Assembly: GCF_000315625.1 (NCBI RefSeq)
Contig: NW_005434658.1
Location: forward strand, 215,482 to 275,241
Source of the DNA: Guillardia theta CCMP2712
Lineage: Eukaryota > Protista > Cryptophyta
Length of the DNA stretch: 59,760 bases
Reading direction: 5' to 3'
Part shown: piece by piece, positions 1-42,968 of the stretch
How the letters are laid out: each line of letters opens with the position of its first letter
How positions within the stretch are numbered: position 1 is the first letter of the stretch
Notes under the pieces: model-generated
Databases searched by the model: none
What the model saw: only the letters and a program-made list of their open reading frames with translations
What the model was told of the DNA's origin: nothing
Translations under genes and position numbers: made by a program

Positions 1-3870
<3,870 letters not shown>

Positions 3871-32984: not shown

Positions 32985-35068
32985 TGTTGTATTCTCTCAG
33001 TTTAGCACCGCGCTGAATCACATGAAGATAATGAAGCCCTCCACATTGTCTGATCCCGCGAAGCCTTCAGAATGCTGTGCTCACAATCAACTGTCTGTTT
33101 GCCCGTGTGCCTTGTGCTGCAAGACGCCGATAATCTCAAGGGACCTGTTGCAAGGGATAGGCAACGATGTGAAGCCTGGAACGTGTAGTGCGCTGGAGGA
33201 GGGGAGGAACGGAGCGATCTGAGAAGAGGAACGATGTACGTGTAAGTCGATGTTTGTGCTTCGGCAGCTCTACCGCTCGCCAAGAACAAGATCCACGCGG
33301 ACGATGCATGCGCCGTTGAAGGTCTGGGTCCTCGCCATCGGAATGATCTTTGTCACCGAGGGTCCGTCGGCGCTACAAGTCGGAAAGGGAGTGGTGGGTG
33401 GGGTAGTCAGGATTTTGAAGTACGGGTGTGGGGTCATGGTCGGATGAAGTGAAGAAGGGGTGAGTTTCACAGAGAAATGATATGGTGGGGAGGGGTACCT
33501 GGGGTCATGACGATTGGTCTGACGGGCAAGGAGATTGGGTGGGTGGTAGGGGGTCGTCGTCGTTTTACCAGGGAACGACAGGGTGGGGGTGGCCTTTTTT
33601 TTGAGTTGAGGTTTAACCCCTGCAGTTTACCCCGTGCACAGCCCCCACCCCCACCCCCTAGGGACATATTACACGATCAGGGTACTACCCCCGCCAAGTC
33701 CAAGTCACGAGGATATGGGTGGGTACAAAACAATACGAACGAGATTGGCCAGGGACCCAGCATACAAATGGTGGACAAGGTGGGGGTGGGGGTGGGGCAA
33801 AGAGGAAGGAGTCGAGCCTGTGGAGAGGTCGCCAACGGAGATACGCCCCTCTGTAAGCTTGCTGACTCAAAAATATTATTAAGAAGTTTTAAAAAGATCT
33901 TTTGAAAGTTTATTTTTCTGTTTTTGTCTTATAATCTTCTTTTATGTCAGCAGGCCCTTCACGATCTGTTACTACACTTTCGACTACCCACCCTACCTTC
34001 GAATTTAGACTACCCCTACCGTAGGGTTCAATTTTGAAACGGCTCATTTCATCTCCCTCATACCCTTCAATTGCGCCGTGACACCTCAGCCGATCACCGA
34101 CCGCTCATTGTTCCGGGCCCGCCGCAGCGACTGTAACAATCGGAAACGGAAAGATCCGAGTGGCGGGGCGCCGTCCGATCCTAAATGGATCGGATGATCA
34201 CCGTCGTCACCGTCACTCAGTCGGCCGGGCCAGGCCGGGGGGGGCGGGCCGGGTCGGACCGTTGTACTATGCCGCACCACGGTACTGTAGTAGTTGAACG
34301 CCGCCGCCGGTTTCTACGGTTGAACGCCGCCGCCGGTTTCAAGTTTGCTCACCCGGGGGGGGGGCGGCCGCGGCAGCCCGTACGACGGTCACCGGGCCGG
34401 TGCGGCGCTATGCCGCAAGTTCAAACCGCGGCCGGGCAGCTCAGGCCGGGCTCGAGGAGCCGCTCCGCCCGGCCGCCGAGTCCGGCCCGGCGGCGGCGTC
34501 ACGGGTTCAACGGCCCCCGTTACACTGCGGCACTGCGGCACTCAGGCTCAGTGCCATACGGTCGGCCGATCATGCGCCCGGCCCGGCGGCGGCCCGCGGC
34601 AGGATCACTGATGAGCCTCGGAGTCGGACTGTCGGAGCCTCCGAGACGGTGCGGCACCGCCCGGCCGGCGTCAGGAGTCCGCCGAAGTTTATAGTACCGT
34701 GGCCTAACTGACAAACGACACGCGGCCCGGCCGCGGCCGCGCCGCGGGCTGGCGCCCGGCTCGCCGGATCTGAACTGAGCCTGAGGGACCAAAAAAAAAT
34801 TCAAGGGACCAAAACAAAATGAATGTATCCCAAGATGTAGGGCGCCTCCAAAAAAAGCTTAGGATTCTCTTTTTTGGTAAAATTTGAAAAAAGTGCCCTA
34901 AAATCTCAATTTGTTGTCTATTTATGTTTTAGAGCGCTGGCATCGGGGGATAAAATGATTAATAGGGACCGGTCCTACAAGAGAAACCTTGATCAAGAAC
35001 GTCATATCGCAGTTTTCAAGGGCGTTAGTATGTAAAAGGACAATTGAACAATTTTAAACTTTATATCG

Positions 35069-38000
35069 TGGTACTAATTTTCAGTACGACCGGTACACAA
35101 GGGAAAGAAAAACACAGGGATAGAGGATCGCACAAGTAGGAAGGAAGGGGGGTGGGGGGTGATACATGCCTGTAATCCCATGGGGTGGGTCAATTGATAC
35201 CCCATCTAAAACCCACTGCAGAAGGGGTGAAGGTAACGGTTACATTTTGAAAGTACCGGTGCTACAATGCAAACTACCACAGTGGTACAACCAAGTGGTA
35301 CAACCAAGAGCACCACAAGCATTCCATCGTCGCCTTCCAGCTTATTTCATCCTTCATCATCCGGTATGCACTCATTTCTTGCTGTTCGCCAAGCAATCCC
35401 TTCCATCTTACACCAGTCTTCAGGATTGGGCCTGGTCACATTGCAGGATTGGGGCAAAACATCGCTATATATCATCGGAACTGAAAACACGCAGCATCAA
35501 CATAGGGTGACATGGCGACTGAAAATGGCAGCACATGCTTATTTGGACCTGATTGTCAGTTGCGGGAAAGAGATGATGCACAGTTGAAGGTATGTCGAAG
35601 TTGCCAAAAAAAATTCCATATTCTATGTGCCTTTCAACGTGCTAATAGCGATCAAGGGGACTATTGCGGAACATGTCAGAGAGGCGGCAAGAGACTTGGG
35701 GTGGGTGGCAGGCCACGTAAACGGACGCGGGAAGGAGATGAGTTTGACATACTGTCCGTTTTCAATGATCCCGACGCACCGATGGCAACGAACAGTGACA
35801 GCAACGTGCAAGCATTCAGGAACTTAGAATCGCACAGGGTCAGCATCAGCACGCAGAAAACCTACGCATATCGCATATTTGCAATGATACTTTTCTTCAA
35901 ATCCTTTCCAGCTTATCATTGCGCTTTGACTGAGTCTTTGGATAATTTGAAGGTACCACTTCCATATGAACCGCTTCTCGCTTTTTTCGGATATTTGTCT
36001 GGAAACGACCAGTTGGCCCGAGCAAGGAAGAGACCACGAGGTCAAACTGGCAACCATGATAGTAACGCATCAATAGCATTGGAAGAAGCTTCATCGTCTA
36101 TGCACATCAACCAAGACATCGGCGAGGATGATGGACAAGAGGAAGATGAGGTCCCGGAGGTCCCGGAGGTCCCGGAGGTCCCGGAGAATGGCGAAGGATC
36201 TGCTTCTACAAAAGCATCAGAGAAAGCAACCGTTGCGGTGTCCACCATCCGAGGGTACAAAAGTGCTTTGAAATATCTGTACAAGCGAAGGAAAGTACCC
36301 TTCACAGCGACGGGGATACCAAAAGATGTTTCATTGGACCTTGAATTGGAGGACAGTATGCATTCATACAAGAAGGTGGTCGCACAAAAGAAGAGCAAAG
36401 GGATAATGTCCATGGAAGAAGGTCGAACTGCTATCAACATGCAGCAGTATCGAATGTTGTGCAACTTTGTGAGACATATCAAACCTCGCAGGGGAAGCAC
36501 AGAACCCGGGGACTCATGGCTTTTCGGTTGGCTATGCACCAACCTCATGTGGAACCTGGTATGTCGGAGTGAATCACTGGACATCCTTCATTTGGAACAC
36601 CTGTCGTGGGAAGAAGACGCCATGAAAGTAGTGTTGCTTCGAACTAAAACGGACCAAGCAGGCATAGGCACGGATTTGAAGAGCACTCGTGTGAAACATG
36701 TTTTTGCGGCTCCGCACAGCCCTGAAATTTGCCCGATCCTCATTCTTGGGCTTTACACCTTTGCATGCAGGGGGATTTGCTTGTCAGAGCAAGGCAGCAA
36801 ATTGTTTATTGGGAGGGACCAACGACATCGATTTCAACAGCTTTTGCAAAGGGTTCTACGCGAGGAACAACCTGACAACTTTGGGATTCCTGGCACGCAC
36901 TCGTTAAGAAAGGGTGGTATTTCCCACCTTCTAGGGATGCTGGATGGCCCAGGTTTGATGTTTTATCAATCTGGAATGACTGCTGATTTTAACATGTTCA
37001 GGAGCACCCACAGTGTACATAAGAGCCAACTGGAAGATAGGTATGGCATGTAGGGATTTGGACTTCACTTCATGATACTATTATGTTTAGGAGATACACA
37101 GGATCGATACATTCTTGGTGGGACGGGAGGAGATCAGTTCGCGGGAAGAATACTGGCAGGGAACGATAGCACCACGGCCAATTTTGGGGTTTTGCCTCCG
37201 CATTTCACACAGGAAGGGTTGAGACAGGTGAAAGAGATAGGGTGGGAGCGTTTTGTCGATGGATACGAGCAATTCCCGAACGGTTTTAAGAAATGTACCG
37301 AATTCTTCCTTGCGAGCATTCTGTATCATCTCCCTACCTTACAAGGATGGTATCCTGACAATGATCATTTCATATGGGGCATGCCTATGTTTGGTATATT
37401 TGGTGCGGACACGATGAGAAGACTCATGTTGCTTCGAAAAGAGGTTGTCGTACCCGTGCACAGATGTACAGAATGTGGGATGACCGCCAGTGGAACCCCG
37501 TCCAAGACTGACATCTTGAGAGAACTGGGAGAAATCAGGCAGGAGATTAGGGCGCATTTCACCGGTTCAGCACTTCCATTCACAGTCGTTCGAAGCACAG
37601 AAGGAGGCGAGACGGTGGCAGGGCAGGCACAGGAATTATTCTTGTCAAACAGCAGCAATGCTACAACTTCCAGTGGACAGTGCAGTGCAACTAACAGACC
37701 AATGATGCAGGGAATTGAGACAGATGCAGGCATGGGCAGTGGTGGTGTATTCGGCCAATTGATGGCGGGATTCCAAGGTATCGTCAAGAAGATGGCGGAA
37801 TTCGAAGGTATGGTCAAGAACGTGGTTGAGGCGCAGAATCAGAAGCAAACGGAGAGTATCAAAGAGTTGATACGGGCAGAGGTGATGCAGATTCTGGGCA
37901 GATTAAACATCCCCGCGATACAAGATGACCGAGTGGCCGGCCGCAATGATTCGAGGGAGATGATGGAGGAAGAACTGGATTCTCCAGCAGATGGACAAGG

Positions 38001-39295
38001 AGCTGAGGAAGAAGTGAACTCGAACCAATCCGCTCGCAGTGGGCAGGGAGTGCTACGTGCGAGCAGTGAATTGGAGGTAGGGGGAGACGATTTCGAGTGG
38101 GAAGGGGAAATGGATGGACGTGCTAAGCACATGGTTCCAAGCAACTTTACCTTCCCTTTGCGGGTGCCGACGAGGAGCATGTTCATGTGGTGGAATATTG
38201 GACAGGACATAATTGATGACACAGGTCAAGTGCGGAGGATCCGGCCATTCAAGTACCTTGGACTTGCACGGTACCGGGACGACATAACAGACTACAACAC
38301 AAGGAGGAACATCAACAAAGCGAGGGTGGTCATGAATGAAGTGGAGAGGATTTGCCGGGAACGGGGGGTGCTTGCACAAGGAGAAGAGATTATGCCACAG
38401 AACTTGATGCAATGTTACAGAACAGGATTTCGTGAAGTGGTTGAGACAGTTTATGGGAAAGACGCATGGGTGGACCTTGGCACGCGGAAACGGTTTTGTT
38501 CATATTCGTACATTACTTACTACAAGAATCTGGGAATTATATGGAGAAGCAATCGGAGTGAAGGCGCTGCACCAACAGCTGAACAGATTGTTGCAGACCC
38601 ATCAGCAGATGATGATGATGTGACAGGTGGTCCCGGTGAGGAGACACAGGCTGATGACCCTGCTGTGACCGACAGCACAGCCGGGAGCTATGCGGCGATG
38701 TTAAAGAGAAACTTGCCAGGGAAGTGAGCGGAAGTGAAGTTTGGTATAAAATAAAGATGCCAAAAGAGACGCGGACAAGAGAGGTTGGGATAGGTGGATG
38801 GAAAGAAGTCGCAAGCATAGTCTGTGAGGAGTGGGAGGGAAGGCTCGCAAGAAACCATCATGAATGCCAAGGAAGGAGGGGAGGGAGGGAAGAGTAAGAG
38901 AGATGAAACCTACCACCGGAGAGAAGGTAAAGGAAGGGAAATTTAGAATGGGACAAAGCAAGGAAGGGGCGGGGGGGGGGTGATGGGTGTAGATTAACAG
39001 AAGCAAATGGTAGGAGGAGGGATTGGAACATCATGATCATATGCACTAGACAGAAGAAAGACAGGAGTGAAGAAAGAGGGAAGTCCAGAGGATAGTTTAG
39101 GTTCATGCAAAGCCAAAGCCTGGAAGCCTGGAATGTGTGTGTAGATGATGAACTTGAAGGTGAACATGAATGGCTTTGAAAAAATTGCAGTTGATGGACA
39201 CATTTATCGCGAAACATGCATAGTTTCAGTACCTTGCACGCATTGTTGGCGTGATCGTTTGAAATGCCTAAGGTTCAAAACTCTGGTACTAATTT
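35069..39295 (+). mobile_element. Candidate extent of the Crypton element, bounded by direct repeat TGGTACTAATTT
   Basis: Identical 12-mers at 35069-35080 and 39284-39295 flank the YR gene. Confidence 0.5.
35512..38727 (+). CDS. Crypton-type tyrosine recombinase with N-terminal PHD-like finger and C-terminal GCR1_C-like region; exons 35512-36952, 37002-37040, 37091-38727 (1038 aa)
   Basis: Removing two GT-AG introns (49 and 50 nt) fuses the 513-aa and 551-aa ORFs and restores the YR catalytic set: R (LVCRSES), K (TKTDQ), HxxR (GTHSLRKG), W (IRANW), Y (QDRY). GDQFAGR...FGVLPPHF is typical of Crypton-like proteins. Confidence 0.9.
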
Positions 39296-39481
39296 GTACC
39301 GGCGATCAGTACTGATAATTGAGTAAATTACATATATATGCGGTACACTTATTTGTACCAGTTACTCTCTTTAATATTAATATATATAGAATTCTCTCCT
39401 TTTTTTTTGACTTAGTGAAAGAATCTTGAAGCGCCCTGCGAGATCCAGTCCTTGTATTCACCAATCGCGCGCGCATCAACC

Positions 39482-40522
39482 ATGCAGCAACCTATGCAGG
39501 CTGAAGATCCCCACGGCGCTCCACTACGTGTTGGAGCAGGCGATGAAGAACCTAATGCAGTAGGCGTGGGAGAGCCATCTGAACTGTCCCATGCGGCCAT
39601 GCAATTCAAGGGGGATGGGGAACAGCGCATGGTAGAGATCATCAAATGTGTCATGCAATACAACGATGGTGCCATATTTGAATGGGGGAAGAAGGAGAAG
39701 ACGCTGAAGGAGGCTCAGGAGGCGCTCAACGGGCATCCTGTGTTTGCAGGGCAGCTGAAGTTGAACACCTTGAAGGACAAATGGCGCAAGATTGAGAAAC
39801 AAGCTGAGGAAATCGCTAACGGAGGTGAGGAAAAATGGGTGAAGCTGTGGCAGAATGGTGGCGGGGAACTTTCAGAGATGCACCAGCTCATGCTCGATCT
39901 GGCCGGCCGGATGAAGGCTATGAAAGACCGGAAGGAGAGGGAGAAGAGGGATGCTCAGGATGAGGAGAATGACGCCAGGGAGAGGCTACAGGGTGCTATG
40001 GAGACCACCGCTAAACGTTGTGGTTATAACATCGCAGCACAGACTGAGCAGTGCTTAACTCCCTCCCCCGAGCCTGCAGATCCGAGTTCCGAGGAGGATA
40101 ATTCTGTTCAGAAAACGCGCAAGAAGAATGAACAGGGAGGCAGCTATGGGCGTGGCACCTCATGCGGTCTACAGAAGCGCGCCAAGCAGGATCCAGCTCT
40201 GTATCCCAACGGGAAAGGGCCCAACCGCAAAAGCGGCAGCCCGTCCTCCGACCATGTTGCGGGCGTTCTCAGTCAGCAAGACCGCCTGTGCGATCTACTG
40301 GAGTCCTCTCAGGCAAACGACAGAGCCGTTATGGAGCAGTTTGGGAAGGCACAGGTCCTCAAGGCCGAGGCAGATATCATCAAGGCCCAGGCAGAACGAA
40401 TTAAGGCGGAAGCTACTCGCTCGCAGCGGGCGGCCGATGCGATGAACGCGTTTCTGGCTTTGCATGACAGGGGTGTGAACATCCCAGATTATCTGGTGAA
40501 GATGCTGAAAGGGAACGACTAA
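39482..40522 (+). CDS. Myb/SANT-like (trihelix) DNA-binding protein with coiled coil; accessory ORF of a PIF/Harbinger element
   Basis: Intronless 346-aa ORF with WGKKEKTLKEAQEALN...LNTLKDKWRKI. It converges on the transposase, with 15 bp between the stop codons. Confidence 0.75.
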   Translation: MQQPMQAEDPHGAPLRVGAGDEEPNAVGVGEPSELSHAAMQFKGDGEQRMVEIIKCVMQYNDGAIFEWGKKEKTLKEAQEALNGHPVFAGQLKLNTLKDKWRKIEKQAEEIANGGEEKWVKLWQNGGGELSEMHQLMLDLAGRMKAMKDRKEREKRDAQDEENDARERLQGAMETTAKRCGYNIAAQTEQCLTPSPEPADPSSEEDNSVQKTRKKNEQGGSYGRGTSCGLQKRAKQDPALYPNGKGPNRKSGSPSSDHVAGVLSQQDRLCDLLESSQANDRAVMEQFGKAQVLKAEADIIKAQAERIKAEATRSQRAADAMNAFLALHDRGVNIPDYLVKMLKGND

Positions 40523-40537
40523 CGGTAGAGGTTTTCT

Positions 40538-41863
40538 TTATTGAAACTCATCTGCCAACGACAGGTAATCCTCCACAGACACATCCAGTACCATGTGCTC
40601 CCCTTCGAAGTATGCTGTTGTCTGGTTCCCATAAAACAGAGTGTGGATGTTGAAAATGAACATCGCAAGAGGAAAGAGCTTCCCAACCTGCTGGCTCCCC
40701 AAACGCAGATTGTGTCGGTGTTGCAGCATGCCGAAGTATTGAGTTGCCTCTCCAAAGCAATTCTCAATGACAATGCGAAAGCGGCCCATAAGGGCGTTAT
40801 ACCTCCTCTCCAGGCGCGTGAGCTCCCCTTCCGCTGGAGCCTTCAAGATGTGCTGCATGAAGCGGCTAAGGGGATACGCCGAATCCCCAAAACAGCAGAA
40901 GTCCACCCCCTGCTCCTCTGACACCTCGCGCAAGGTTTCAAGAACGTCAGACCGCCGAAACATTGTTGCATCGTGTTCACAACCCCTCCAAGGCCCCCAC
41001 ACGCAGCATATCCCATTCGGGAATACACAAGCCTGATACTTCAACCCGTGCAGCCTCTCCTTTCCGGCAAACGTCTGCCTGTCATGTAGGGTCAAGTTCC
41101 AGTTAGCATCACCCCCGGGTCGGCACGTGGGCTGTAAATGACCGTCAAAAATAGCGACAAGGTTGTCATGTGGACAACCCCAACTTCGCATGTGAGCAGC
41201 AAATTGGCTAAATCGATGCCTCCAAGGCCGCATGCTTGCCAACAAGATAGCGTACCTCTTGTGCAAGATTCTGACCATGTGATTGAAAGTTTCGGAAAGA
41301 ACTGTGATGGACCCACCTAGAATATATACCAGATCGCACCACCGCGCAGGATATGACAGCCGACGCAGGAAAATCATGAAGGCTGAGTCTGCACGCACGG
41401 ATGTCCTGTGCCCTCGCTTTCCAAACTTCAACAAGATTGGTTCGTCCCCTACCATCATTGGCTGCCCGTTATCATCCTTCAAGCATCGCAGAATGCGATG
41501 AAAATGTACTTTACGAAAACGGAACTGCTGCACGAATTCCACGTGCGAGAAGGAATCTGGCGTCTTCAGTGGTCCCTGCGATCCGGTCCGCTGAAAGGGC
41601 AGATTGACGATACGGTTGTTCATGTCCATCATAGACAACAAGCACACAAGCTCCCGCACCCGACGTTTTGAACGAAACAGCCAAAACAATGCATCACCAA
41701 CCCCCATGCCAAGAAGCCGCATGCTCTGCCGTGAATGCTGCGAAATCGTGAGCATGAGAATCTGCATGATGCGCGCTGATGAGCGATTGACCACAGCCTT
41801 CTCCAAATGGTAGAGGAGGGTGCGCCTCCCATACATCCGTGGCGTGTCTCGCTGAATCGGCAT
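40538..41863 (-). CDS. PIF/Harbinger (HARBI1-like, DDE_Tnp_4) transposase, intact
   Basis: QQFRF, FLRRLSYPARWCDL, IFDGH, HGLKYQ, GPWRGCEHDATMF, FGDSAYPL and RIVIENCFG show all catalytic acidic residues. First ATG at 41863. Confidence 0.93.
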   Translation of the reverse strand: MPIQRDTPRMYGRRTLLYHLEKAVVNRSSARIMQILMLTISQHSRQSMRLLGMGVGDALFWLFRSKRRVRELVCLLSMMDMNNRIVNLPFQRTGSQGPLKTPDSFSHVEFVQQFRFRKVHFHRILRCLKDDNGQPMMVGDEPILLKFGKRGHRTSVRADSAFMIFLRRLSYPARWCDLVYILGGSITVLSETFNHMVRILHKRYAILLASMRPWRHRFSQFAAHMRSWGCPHDNLVAIFDGHLQPTCRPGGDANWNLTLHDRQTFAGKERLHGLKYQACVFPNGICCVWGPWRGCEHDATMFRRSDVLETLREVSEEQGVDFCCFGDSAYPLSRFMQHILKAPAEGELTRLERRYNALMGRFRIVIENCFGEATQYFGMLQHRHNLRLGSQQVGKLFPLAMFIFNIHTLFYGNQTTAYFEGEHMVLDVSVEDYLSLADEFQ

Positions 41864-42022
41864 GGTTGATGGGAGCAAGGGCACGGTTTGAATCTTAAAA
41901 TGTTACTATTATCTTACAACATGACTTATTAAATTGCAATACCGAACACGTTTTCTGCGCGCGTTCTGAAATCTTAAATGTGGCCCACAATTGAGAATTC
42001 AGAATTGACCTGTAATTGGCGT

Positions 42023-42034
42023 ACCGAACACGCC
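42023..42034 (-). repeat. Putative right TIR of the Harbinger element (GGCGTGTTCGGT on the minus strand), with a subterminal copy at 41940-41950
   Basis: Resembles PIF/Tourist-type GGC.TGTTCGG ends. TACCGAACACG occurs twice and is followed by TAG at the outer copy. Confidence 0.65.
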
Positions 42035-42145
42035 TAGTGGAATGGGGCTAAGAGCTCGTTAAAGGGGTACTACTGATGTTGTAACGGTTAGTTTGATTTG
42101 AAGTTACAAGGGGAGGATGGGGTGGTCTTTGTGGGCTCGCCTCAG

Positions 42146-42220
42146 AGTTGAAGTTTGAGTTTAAGTTTGAGTTTAAGGTTTAAGTTCAAGTTCAAGTTCA
42201 AAGTTCAAAGTTCAAAGTTA
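42146..42220. repeat. Degenerate (AAGTTC/AAGTTTG)n simple repeat
   Basis: Directly visible. Confidence 0.8.
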
Positions 42221-42868
42221 ATCTAGTGATTAAGGTTTAGGGTATCGGAAACAGTCACTGAGTCGAATGAGTTTTCGTTCAAGTCAAGTTTATTGAAGAT
42301 CAAAGAGATTTTTAAAGTTAAAGTTAAGGCCTGACATATGCGGACGAACGATATGTTCGTTGATCAGCAAGAAGAGGAACTTATAGAGACTGAGGATAGT
42401 ATCGGGTTGTTGCTCAGCGCGACGCACTGCGGTCAGAGTCAAAGCGATGATGGTGTAGAGCTTGGTATGCTTCTGAGTTGCGATGGTGTAGTTGAAGACG
42501 GATCTGAGAGGTTGGTCTATGGCGCAGTGAACTGAGATGAAGATATCGTTGTTGGTTGACAATGTATCGACCATGTTGTTGATGTAATCCCTTGTTGGGA
42601 CGTGGGTAGAGTTGGGGGTCTGAGTGAGGTCTTTGTCCCAGAACATGATGATCTCGATGCATCTTTTTGCGAGTCCCAGGCTTCAAGAACCAGGCTCGCG
42701 TCCGATCGCCAGGTGACCGCCTGTCAGGAGGCTATCACTCAGACCCGGGCTCCGGGAGGCTCAGTAACGTAGTAAACGGCCCCGCCGGGTTGCCTGATCG
42801 GCTGAGTGAGTTGCATAGCTGATTGGGACAGCGCAGATCTGACTAGGAAAGAAAATTGCTGTCCTACG

Positions 42869-42968
42869 NNNNNNNNNNNNNNNNNNNNNNNNNNNNNNNN
42901 NNNNNNNNNNNNNNNNNNNNNNNNNNNNNNNNNNNNNNNNNNNNNNNNNNNNNNNNNNNNNNNNNNNN
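42869..42968. other. Assembly gap (100 N)
   Basis: Run of N. Confidence 1.

What the first reader, a model, noticed from the sequence alone, without database searches (positions are those of the whole stretch)
35069..42037. Possible compound transposon: intact Crypton tyrosine recombinase joined to an intact PIF/Harbinger gene pair
Seen: three uninterrupted genes in 7 kb (YR, Myb/SANT-like, DDE transposase), with only ~750 bp between the YR stop and the Myb start and no host gene between them. A good Harbinger-type TIR lies at the right end (42023-42034), but I found no exact partner; there is only a 10/12 match, GGCGTGATCGTT, at 39248-39259. Known: Cryptons (YR, circular intermediate) and Harbingers (DDE + Myb, cut-and-paste) are normally separate superfamilies. 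Inference: this is either one element carrying two recombination chemistries, a Crypton that targets or replaced a Harbinger end, or chance nesting.
Basis: partly seen in the sequence, partly recalled or inferred. Interest (0 to 1): 0.85.

Follow-up and report, generated by a model that had tools for sequence, protein, structure and literature searches.

The report
Crypton nested in a truncated Harbinger
Two unrelated jumping genes of the alga Guillardia theta lie nested here: a tyrosine-recombinase (Crypton-type) element that landed inside a PIF/Harbinger element, each with its own ends and separate copies elsewhere, so this is ordinary nesting and not a new two-enzyme transposon.

Summary
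The three genes are real. They belong to two separate transposons, not to one compound element.

**Element 1 (window 34825-39457, 4,633 bp)** is Crypton-like.
- It has one three-exon tyrosine-recombinase gene with all catalytic residues present.
- It has no long terminal repeats and ends in a short direct repeat, (CT)TGTAT.
- Its two ends recur on other contigs with other flanks, including a 347-bp internally deleted copy.

**Element 2** is a PIF/Harbinger.
- A complete copy on contig C13 is 2,855 bp with perfect 17-bp TIRs (GGCGTGTTCGGTACGCC) and no Crypton.
- C13, C51 and C127 carry the uninterrupted site gaatttCTTGTATTCACC.
- On C276 the Crypton sits exactly at that CTTGTAT, 271 bp inside the left TIR.

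**The window copy** has only the right TIR. The Harbinger's left TIR and 271-bp arm are missing, and unique DNA abuts the Crypton's left end. It therefore cannot move as a Harbinger. How the arm was lost is unresolved.

**One odd point:** 3 of the 8 Harbinger loci in the genome touch a Crypton, from two Crypton subfamilies. This hints at a target preference.

**Verdict:** nested members of known superfamilies, of low to moderate interest. Other notes of this scan cover this same stretch and dead Crypton-derived genes elsewhere in this genome.

The parts
34825..39457 (+). Crypton-like tyrosine-recombinase element, 4,633 bp, one gene, no TIR or LTR
   Evidence: Own-genome matches start at w34824-34826 on C276, C601, C74, C66, C14 and C11, and end at w39455-39458 on C170, C74, C54 and C65. 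C74:33569-33915 joins w34825-34892 directly to w39179-39457 at 100% identity. Read contigs show several different flanks at 34824-34826. No long terminal repeats were found.
34825..34829 (.). Left copy of the terminal direct repeat / crossover core: (T)GTAT in the window, CTTGTAT on C276
   Evidence: Sequence read directly. C276 junction reads gaatttCTTGTAT|cccaag.
39451..39457 (.). Right copy of the core, CTTGTAT. It is the last 7 bp of the Crypton and is identical to the Harbinger target
   Evidence: The uninterrupted Harbinger has a single CTTGTAT.
35512..36952 (+). YR exon 1: N-terminal Cys/His-rich region, SAM-like core-binding region, and catalytic R (CRSES), K (TKTDQ) and HxxR (HSLRKGG)
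   Evidence: R, K, H and R are invariant among 20 relatives. The splice donor at 36953 is confirmed by an RNA-like contig.
37002..37040 (+). 39-nt micro-exon encoding APTVYIRANWKI, which carries the conserved Trp
   Evidence: Canonical GT..AG on both sides. The intronless paralogue L012 reads ...GGPVSTSIFQRASWSLGNTKDRYI. Intron 1 is spliced in run X9; intron 2 is not seen spliced.
37091..38727 (+). YR exon 3: catalytic Tyr (DRYI) and a long C-terminal region with no Pfam match
   Evidence: Poly(A) tails start after about 38769 in raw RNA reads.
39451..42034 (.). PIF/Harbinger element lacking its first 271 bp (left TIR and left arm)
   Evidence: 99.9% identical to the complete 2,855-bp copy on C13 from exactly w39451 onward.
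39482..40522 (+). Harbinger accessory gene, a helical protein that is probably DNA-binding; the Myb/SANT-like identity is unconfirmed
   Evidence: It sits tail-to-tail with the transposase gene, as in PIF/Harbinger elements.
40538..41863 (-). DDE_Tnp_4 transposase gene (441 aa from the conserved Met)
   Evidence: Pfam PF13359 9e-18. The DDE triad and the start Met are invariant among homologues. Identical to the C13 copy at protein level.
42018..42034 (-). Right 17-bp TIR, GGCGTGTTCGGTACGCC, followed by TAG
   Evidence: Copies on C127 and C51 diverge immediately after it.
42038..42663 (.). 'Flank B': a 626-bp low-copy unit attached to the Harbinger's right end here and on C13
   Evidence: No mismatch to C13 over this stretch, and both copies end at the same base. 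A 90% copy on C11 has no Harbinger.

Best explanation
The region holds two independent DNA transposons of Guillardia theta, one nested in the other.

**The Crypton-like element (w34825-39457).** It encodes only a tyrosine recombinase. By analogy with other Cryptons it is thought to excise as a circle and integrate by conservative recombination across a few identical bases. Here the core is (CT)TGTAT.

**The insertion.** A copy integrated into the left subterminal arm of a PIF/Harbinger element. The site is its single CTTGTAT, 271 bp inside the left TIR and 24 bp upstream of the accessory gene's ATG.

**The Harbinger.** It is a cut-and-paste element with 17-bp TIRs, a DDE_Tnp_4 transposase and a helical accessory protein.

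**The window copy.** The Harbinger's left TIR and arm are absent. Unique DNA joins the Crypton's left end directly. This copy is therefore a secondary product of the nested arrangement. Candidate routes are recombination or gene conversion between two Crypton copies, recombinase-mediated deletion, or templated repair.

**Consequence.** The pair is not a unit of transposition here. The Harbinger part is immobile but can still supply proteins in trans. The Crypton keeps both of its ends and an intact gene.

**Shown:** the boundaries, the empty site, the nesting, and the separate copies.
**Inferred:** the circle mechanism and how the arm was lost.
For: **The Harbinger exists alone.**
- C13 holds a complete 2,855-bp copy with both TIRs and no YR gene. 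It matches the window from exactly w39451 to w42663 at 99.9%.
- The empty site gaatttCTTGTATTCACC is present on C13, C51 and C127.

**The nested copy on C276.** Its order is left TIR, 271-bp arm, CTTGTAT, Crypton, CTTGTAT, rest of the Harbinger. Independent read contigs contain that left-arm/Crypton junction (X2) and the uninterrupted Harbinger site (X1, X2).

**The Crypton has its own ends.** They recur on at least 8 other contigs, and internally deleted derivatives exist (C74 347 bp, C657). An 87-90% identical copy on C169 has no Harbinger.

**The window lacks a left TIR.**
- Only one TIR is present in the window, and only 11 exact TIRs exist in the genome.
- The window's left flank is unique and is not the Harbinger arm.
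- A 6.2-kb DNA contig from another run reads from that flank 30 bases into the Crypton.

**The YR gene looks functional.**
- Catalytic R, K, HxxR, W and Y are present.
- Relatives give weak Phage_integrase and Phage_int_SAM hits.
- Intron 1 splicing and poly(A) tails are seen in RNA data.
Against: - The window and C276 share the same Crypton/Harbinger right junction and three SNPs against C13. The nested pair has therefore been copied at least once as a block, or the same site was hit twice.
- C276 has a 100-N gap inside the Crypton and ends inside the Harbinger. Its right TIR and flank cannot be seen.
- Divergence between the window and C276 drops from about 0.55% in the Crypton to 1 difference in 2,249 bp right of that gap. 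This needs recombination, gene conversion or an assembly join to explain.
- The circle intermediate and current activity were not tested.
- The second intron is supported only by homology.
Confidence: 0.85

Rival explanations
1. **A true compound transposon ('HarCry', like MarCry-1_FO).** The Harbinger TIRs mobilise a unit that carries both the DDE pair and the YR gene.
For: - On C276 the Crypton lies between the left TIR and the Harbinger genes.
- The window and C276 share the junction and three SNPs.
- Precedents exist for DDE plus YR in one element: MarCry-1_FO and Tec1/Tec2 (PMC3212892).
Against: - Only one assembled copy has the left TIR next to the Crypton, and the window copy has none.
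- No two TIR-bounded composite copies with different flanks were found.
- Both elements are commoner apart.
- The Crypton part is about 10 times more diverged between the two copies than the Harbinger part.
Confidence: 0.05
2. **Recombinase-driven transduction.** The Crypton's recombinase paired its left end with a pseudo-site 3.2 kb beyond its right end (..gaTGCATc at w42663). It then moved Crypton, Harbinger remainder and 626 bp of flank B as one 7.84-kb circle into the window locus.
For: - The block w34825-42663 is bounded on the left exactly by the Crypton terminus and lies between two unique flanks.
- The right boundary reads TGCAT against the core TGTAT.
- This needs fewer steps than the alternatives.
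Against: - The 4-of-5 core match is weak.
- No donor with Crypton, Harbinger and B together is visible, because C276 ends too early.
- No second example is known.
- C13 ends flank B at the same base without any Crypton.
- The divergence step at about w38900 is not explained.
Confidence: 0.1
3. **Targeted integration.** Cryptons of this genome prefer the left arm of this Harbinger family, so the association is not chance although the elements stay separate.
For: - 3 of only 8 Harbinger loci touch a Crypton. On C16 and C276, Crypton-1 lies 271 bp inside the left TIR. On C51, a 53%-identical Crypton-2 has its left end 12 bp outside the left TIR.
- My rough estimate of chance contacts genome-wide is about 0.006.
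- The arm shares 9- to 12-mers (AATTGAGTAAAT, TAATTTGTACC, ATTTGTACCAG) with the Crypton's right 300 bp, beyond all 500 shuffles.
- The target shares a 7-bp core with the Crypton's right end.
Against: - There are only two independent events, and the distance threshold was chosen after seeing the data.
- Transposons cluster anyway.
- Other Crypton flanks are simply A/T-rich.
- The colinear alignment of arm and Crypton end is only marginal (36 of 1,000 shuffles reach its score), and the reverse strand scores as well.
Confidence: 0.25
4. **Assembly join.** The window contig fuses a solo Crypton (unique left flank) with the right half of the C276 composite through the near-identical repeat.
For: - The divergence step coincides with C276's 100-N gap.
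- A scaffold gap lies 205 bp right of flank B, at w42869-42968.
- DNA-run contigs show only the C276-type letters at w38633-38740 and only the C13-type letters at w40077 and w40144.
Against: - No other contig holds a long Crypton right end with a different flank.
- The right junction is assembled twice.
- Read depth over the accessory gene is about 3-4 times that of the unique flank (the tool warns that depth is not copy number).
Confidence: 0.12

Closest known systems
Crypton DNA transposons, especially CryptonS of oomycetes and diatoms (Goodwin et al. 2003; Kojima & Jurka 2011, PMC3212892)
   Same: - A single tyrosine-recombinase gene with introns.
- No reverse transcriptase, TIRs or long direct repeats.
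- Short (5-6 bp) terminal direct repeats taken as the crossover substrate.
- A long conserved C-terminal region without GCR1_C.
- Low copy number.
- Non-autonomous derivatives, as for CryptonI-1N1_RPro.
   Different: - The host is a cryptophyte; no report was found in the paper library.
- The core is (CT)TGTAT rather than the TATGG common in CryptonS.
- The catalytic region is split by a 39-nt micro-exon.
- Placement among the CryptonF/S/A/I groups was not tested.
PIF/Harbinger superfamily
   Same: - DDE_Tnp_4 transposase with an intact DDE triad.
- A second, helical accessory gene.
- TIRs of the GGC..GTTCGG type.
- Internally deleted MITE-like derivatives (C51 626 bp, C127).
   Different: - Flanks read xTA...TAx (GTA..TAG three times, CTA..TAC once) rather than a plain 3-bp TWA duplication.
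- The accessory protein has no detectable Myb Pfam domain.
- The window copy lacks the left TIR.
MarCry-1_FO of Fusarium oxysporum, and Tec1/Tec2 of Euplotes (DDE and YR in one element)
   Same: A DDE-transposase element and a tyrosine-recombinase gene are physically joined. On C276 the YR gene lies inside the DDE element's TIRs.
   Different: MarCry has four copies more than 97% identical, all bounded by the Mariner TIRs and TA duplications, which shows movement as one unit (PMC3212892). Here no such set exists, the Crypton keeps its own functional-looking ends, and the window copy has one TIR only.

Membership tests
Crypton | Encodes a tyrosine recombinase with the catalytic R...HxxR...Y set (plus K and H/W) | tested here: met
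   R (CRSES), K (TKTDQ), H and R (HSLRKGG), W (micro-exon) and Y (DRYI) are present. R, K, H and R are invariant and Y nearly invariant in a 20-sequence alignment. Relatives give weak Pfam hits: Phage_integrase 6.5e-4 and Phage_int_SAM_1 2e-5. A profile search of PDB sequences was blank, and the AF2 model of the exon-1 part was poor.
Crypton | No reverse transcriptase or other retroelement genes (unlike DIRS, Ngaro, PAT) | tested here: met
   The 4.6-kb element is filled by one 3.2-kb gene plus 0.7-kb flanks. Pfam finds nothing else.
Crypton | No TIRs or long terminal repeats; short (4-6 bp) terminal direct repeats | tested here: met
   No terminal repeat longer than 19 nt at 79% match. TGTAT is at both ends in the window and CTTGTAT at both ends on C276.
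Crypton | Mobile: several copies with the same ends in different flanks | tested here: met
   Coordinates of end-matching copies on at least 8 contigs. Different upstream sequences at w34824-34826 in read contigs. An empty site exists in uninterrupted Harbinger copies.
Crypton | Excision as a circle and integration by conservative recombination | not testable with these tools
   No circle junction was listed among the joints. Assembled contigs drop rare forms, so this says little.
Crypton | Groups with a named Crypton clade (F, S, A or I) in a YR tree | not tested
PIF/Harbinger | DDE_Tnp_4 transposase with an intact DDE triad | tested here: met
   PF13359 at 9e-18. D247, D334 and E374 are invariant among 13 homologues.
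PIF/Harbinger | Second gene for a Myb/SANT-like DNA-binding protein | tested here: inconclusive
   A second gene is present and conserved in related copies. It has no Pfam hit. The nearest Atlas cluster is named Myb/SANT-like at 0.92. The best fold match is the Sap1 DNA-binding domain at E 0.78.
PIF/Harbinger | Terminal inverted repeats at both ends | tested here: not met
   The family has perfect 17-bp TIRs on C13, C51 and C127. The window copy has only the right one. It is a truncated member.
PIF/Harbinger | 3-bp TWA target-site duplication | tested here: inconclusive
   Flanks are GTA..TAG (C13, C127, C206) and CTA..TAC (C51). These fit a TA duplication in a GTAG/CTAC target, or TA being part of the TIR. 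No empty site was available.
Composite DDE+YR transposon (MarCry-like) | Several copies in which one pair of TIRs with target duplications encloses both genes | tested here: not met
   Only C276 shows a TIR outside the Crypton, and its other end is off the contig. The window copy has one TIR.

The most novel reading that the evidence does not exclude
Cryptons of Guillardia theta may recognise the left arm of this Harbinger family as a preferred docking site. The arm shares GTACC-type motifs and a CTTGTAT core with the Crypton's right end. The recombinase may then rearrange or carry along the adjoining Harbinger DNA, producing the 7.84-kb one-TIR block seen here. That would be recombinase-driven interplay between two transposon superfamilies.
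Probability: 0.15. Interest if true: 0.6.

Novelty: new member of a known kind. Interest (0 to 1): 0.3.

Why it matters
The result removes an attractive but wrong reading, a transposon with two recombination chemistries.

It also gives base-exact ends, the crossover core, an empty site, non-autonomous derivatives and a gene model for a young Crypton family in a cryptophyte. Crypton boundaries are usually hard to define. A filled site (C276) and empty sites (C13, C51, C127) in the same genome form a clean natural record of a tyrosine-recombinase integration.

If the repeated Crypton-Harbinger contacts reflect targeting, this would be a testable case of one transposon family using another as a landing pad.

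Tried and rejected
- **Fetching more genome DNA.** Later own-genome searches gave coordinates only (onward). Flanks of most other Crypton copies, the C11 copy of flank B and more of C13's left flank could not be read.\n- **Folding the exon-1 part of the recombinase.** With 20 relatives the model was poor (pLDDT 56), so no fold search was run on it.\n- **Profile search of solved structures with the YR alignment.** Only noise was returned.\n- **Fold search of the accessory protein.** No significant match; the best was the Sap1 DNA-binding domain at E 0.78.\n- **Joined spliced YR protein.** It was not built or searched. Whether it is a relic of an old Harbinger end stays open (alignment p about 0.04, with the reverse-strand control scoring equally).\n- **C276 as a haplotig of the window.** Rejected: its flank beyond the left TIR has no match in the window.\n- **Flank B as a transposon interrupted by the Harbinger.** Rejected: C13's left flank does not continue B in the C11 copy.\n- **A polinton-like virus or DIRS-type element.** Rejected on size and gene content.
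Full report
**Organism and setting.** The window is contig C16:215482-275241 of an 87.1-Mb, 669-contig assembly. A paralogue of the accessory gene is named GUITHDRAFT_103148 of Guillardia theta CCMP2712. The transposase's nearest outside relatives are from the cryptophytes Hanusia and Rhodomonas. Neighbouring ORFs look like host genes, with TMEM260-like and Sushi-repeat domains.

**The genes.**
- ORF 40538-41884 (minus strand) is a DDE_Tnp_4 transposase. Its DDE triad and its start Met (ATG at 41863) are invariant among homologues.
- ORF 39482-40522 (plus strand) has no Pfam match.
  - Its N-terminal roughly 90 residues fold into confident helices.
  - A language-model neighbour is called Myb/SANT-like.
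  - The best solved-structure match, the Sap1 DNA-binding domain, is not significant.
  - It is the expected Harbinger accessory gene by position and by conservation in related copies. The Myb label stays unproven.
- The recombinase gene is two same-frame ORFs (35512-37053 and 37072-38727) separated by a stop.
  - An intronless paralogue reads HSFRKG...GGPVSTSIFQRASWSLGNTKDRYI.
  - The window matches this only if 36953-37001 and 37041-37090 are removed. That leaves a 39-nt micro-exon (37002-37040) encoding APTVYIRANWKI.
  - The model is exon 1 35512-36952, the micro-exon, and exon 3 37091-38727, giving 1,038 codons by arithmetic.
- R, K, HxxR, W and Y are all present, and most are invariant among 20 relatives. 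Some relatives give weak Phage_integrase and SAM-like Pfam hits.
- An RNA-like contig splices intron 1 exactly but retains intron 2. Raw RNA reads carry poly(A) tails after about 38769.

**Two elements, each with its own ends.** Own-genome searches show a large YR family (at least 78 matches) and a small Harbinger family.
- *Harbinger.* The TIR is GGCGTGTTCGGTACGCC. It has only 11 exact occurrences genome-wide, at 8 loci.
  - C13 has a complete 2,855-bp copy with both TIRs and no recombinase gene.
  - C127 and C51 hold internally deleted copies with both TIRs.
  - The window has only the right TIR (42018-42034).
- *Crypton.* Own-genome matches begin at w34824-34826 on six contigs and end at w39455-39458 on four.
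  - C74:33569-33915 is a 347-bp copy that joins the first 68 bp to the last 279 bp at 100% identity.
  - Read contigs show several different sequences upstream of 34825 and a still smaller derivative.
  - An older copy on C169 (87-90%) has no Harbinger.
  - The element is therefore w34825-39457 (4,633 bp), with no long terminal repeats.

**The nesting.**
- C13, C51 and C127 read ...gaatttCTTGTATTCACCAATCG... without interruption.
- On C276 the same arm runs from the left TIR for 271 bp to gaatttCTTGTAT and then switches to the Crypton's cccaagatg....
- At the other end the Crypton's ...ccagtcCTTGTAT is followed by TCACCAATCG.
- The right-hand CTTGTAT belongs to the Crypton, because other copies end with it. 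The left-hand one belongs to the target.
- The join is therefore a conservative crossover within 7 identical bases. This is what tyrosine-recombinase integration predicts, and it matches the short terminal repeats described for Cryptons (PMC3212892).
- The insertion lies 24 bp upstream of the accessory gene's ATG.

**The window copy is one-sided.**
- Left of 34825 the window has unique GC-rich DNA, not the Harbinger arm. Only TGTAT is shared at the junction.
- An independent DNA run has a 6.2-kb contig running from this flank 30 bases into the Crypton.
- To the right, the window matches C13 through the right TIR and for a further 626 bp ('flank B'). Both copies stop at the same base, w42663.
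- B also exists on C11 at 90% identity without a Harbinger. C13's other flanks are unique.
- The window and C276 share three SNPs against C13 in the Harbinger.
- The two Cryptons differ at about 22 sites plus an 18-bp and a 16-bp indel. The 16-bp indel breaks the C276 reading frame. Right of a 100-N gap in C276 there is only one difference in 2,249 bp.
- I cannot decide between four routes: recombination or gene conversion between two Crypton copies, recombinase-mediated deletion or transduction using a TGCAT pseudo-site at w42663, templated break repair, or an assembly join.
- All four leave the main conclusion intact: no left TIR means no Harbinger-type mobility for this copy.

**Is the association chance?**
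- On C51, a Crypton of another subfamily (53% protein identity) ends 12 bp outside the left TIR of a 626-bp Harbinger derivative. A 99.8% identical copy on C168 has a different flank.
- Its terminus (TTTAT, then about 9 nt, then TAGGGCGC) resembles that of the window element (TGTAT, then about 9 nt, then TAGGGCGC).
- So 3 of 8 Harbinger loci, representing two independent events, touch a Crypton. I estimate about 0.006 such contacts by chance. That assumes roughly 55 Crypton loci and a 300-bp distance limit, which I chose after seeing the data.
- The Harbinger arm is rich in TGTACC. It shares 9- to 12-mers with the Crypton's right 300 bp beyond all 500 shuffles, but not with the Crypton's left end or interior.
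- A colinear alignment of the two is only marginal.
- This is a lead, not a finding.

**Comparison with known systems.** The YR element meets every testable Crypton criterion. Its placement among the named Crypton groups was not tested. The second element is a PIF/Harbinger, with an unusual xTA...TAx flank pattern. Composite DDE+YR elements are known (MarCry-1_FO, Tec1/Tec2). They are defined by several copies bounded by one pair of TIRs, and that is not met here. No paper in the library describes Cryptons or Harbingers of G. theta; Repbase could not be checked. Other notes of this scan describe this same gene's micro-exon and dead Crypton-derived genes elsewhere in this genome.

**Verdict.** This is ordinary nesting of two known kinds of transposon, followed by a secondary rearrangement. 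The junctions are unusually clean, and there is a modest hint that the Crypton targets the Harbinger arm.

Noticed in passing
window 42038-42663; L051:8603-9231 (C13): A 626-bp unit ('flank B', with a 118-aa minus-strand ORF and no Pfam hit) follows the Harbinger's right TIR in both the window and C13. There are no mismatches, and both copies end at the same base. A 90% copy on C11 has no Harbinger. Why it travels with the Harbinger is unexplained.
   Followed up: partly
L005:3819-4456 (C51:120929-121566): A 626-bp internally deleted Harbinger (both TIRs, 100% identical parts) lies 12 bp from the left terminus of a Crypton of a second subfamily. The same Crypton on C168 (L022) has another flank.
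   Followed up: partly
Harbinger ends on L032, L034, L005, L035; window 42035-42037: Flanks read GTA|TIR...TIR|TAG (three loci) or CTA|...|TAC (one locus). This is not a direct 3-bp TWA duplication. It fits a TA duplication in a GTAG/CTAC target, or a 19-bp TIR that starts with TA.
   Followed up: partly
window 39240-39365 versus Harbinger left arm (L032:3935-4205): The Crypton's right subterminal region and the Harbinger's left arm share AATTGAGTAAAT, TAATTTGTACC and ATTTGTACCAG, with many GGTAC/GTACC motifs (about 17-22 per kb against 2.2 in the window). Dyads such as GGTACTAATTTGTACC resemble recombinase sites.
   Followed up: partly
window 37041-37090: The only RNA-like contig over this place keeps intron 2. 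If intron 2 is kept, the frame stops at a TGA that overlaps (ATGA) the ATG of the downstream ORF, which begins just before the catalytic Tyr.
   Followed up: partly
C74:33569-33915; loose end at window 34899; C657:6597-6831: Very short non-autonomous Crypton derivatives exist at about 100% identity: a 347-bp form, a form that joins w34899 to the last 20 bp or so, and one that skips w35134-38487. This suggests recent mobilisation in trans.
   Followed up: no
L017 (C76:97514-101287): An 851-aa open frame related to the recombinase has SSFRKG in place of HxxR and DQCI in place of DRYI. It is a catalytically dead relative, in line with other notes of this scan on domesticated Cryptons in this genome.
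   Followed up: no
window 38633-38740: DNA-run contigs show only the C276-type letters here. Raw RNA reads show window-type letters at 38633-38670 but C276-type letters at 38724-38740. There may be at least a third copy, or the strains or consensus differ.
   Followed up: no
L051:8000-8220 (C13:52999-53219): A roughly 170-220-bp unit in C13's flank is a tandem satellite with many copies on C114, C282, C170 and C296.
   Followed up: no
window 1-2000 and 42869-42968: The first 2 kb has strong C-over-G and T-over-A skew (GC skew -0.56). A 100-N scaffold gap lies 205 bp to the right of flank B.
   Followed up: no
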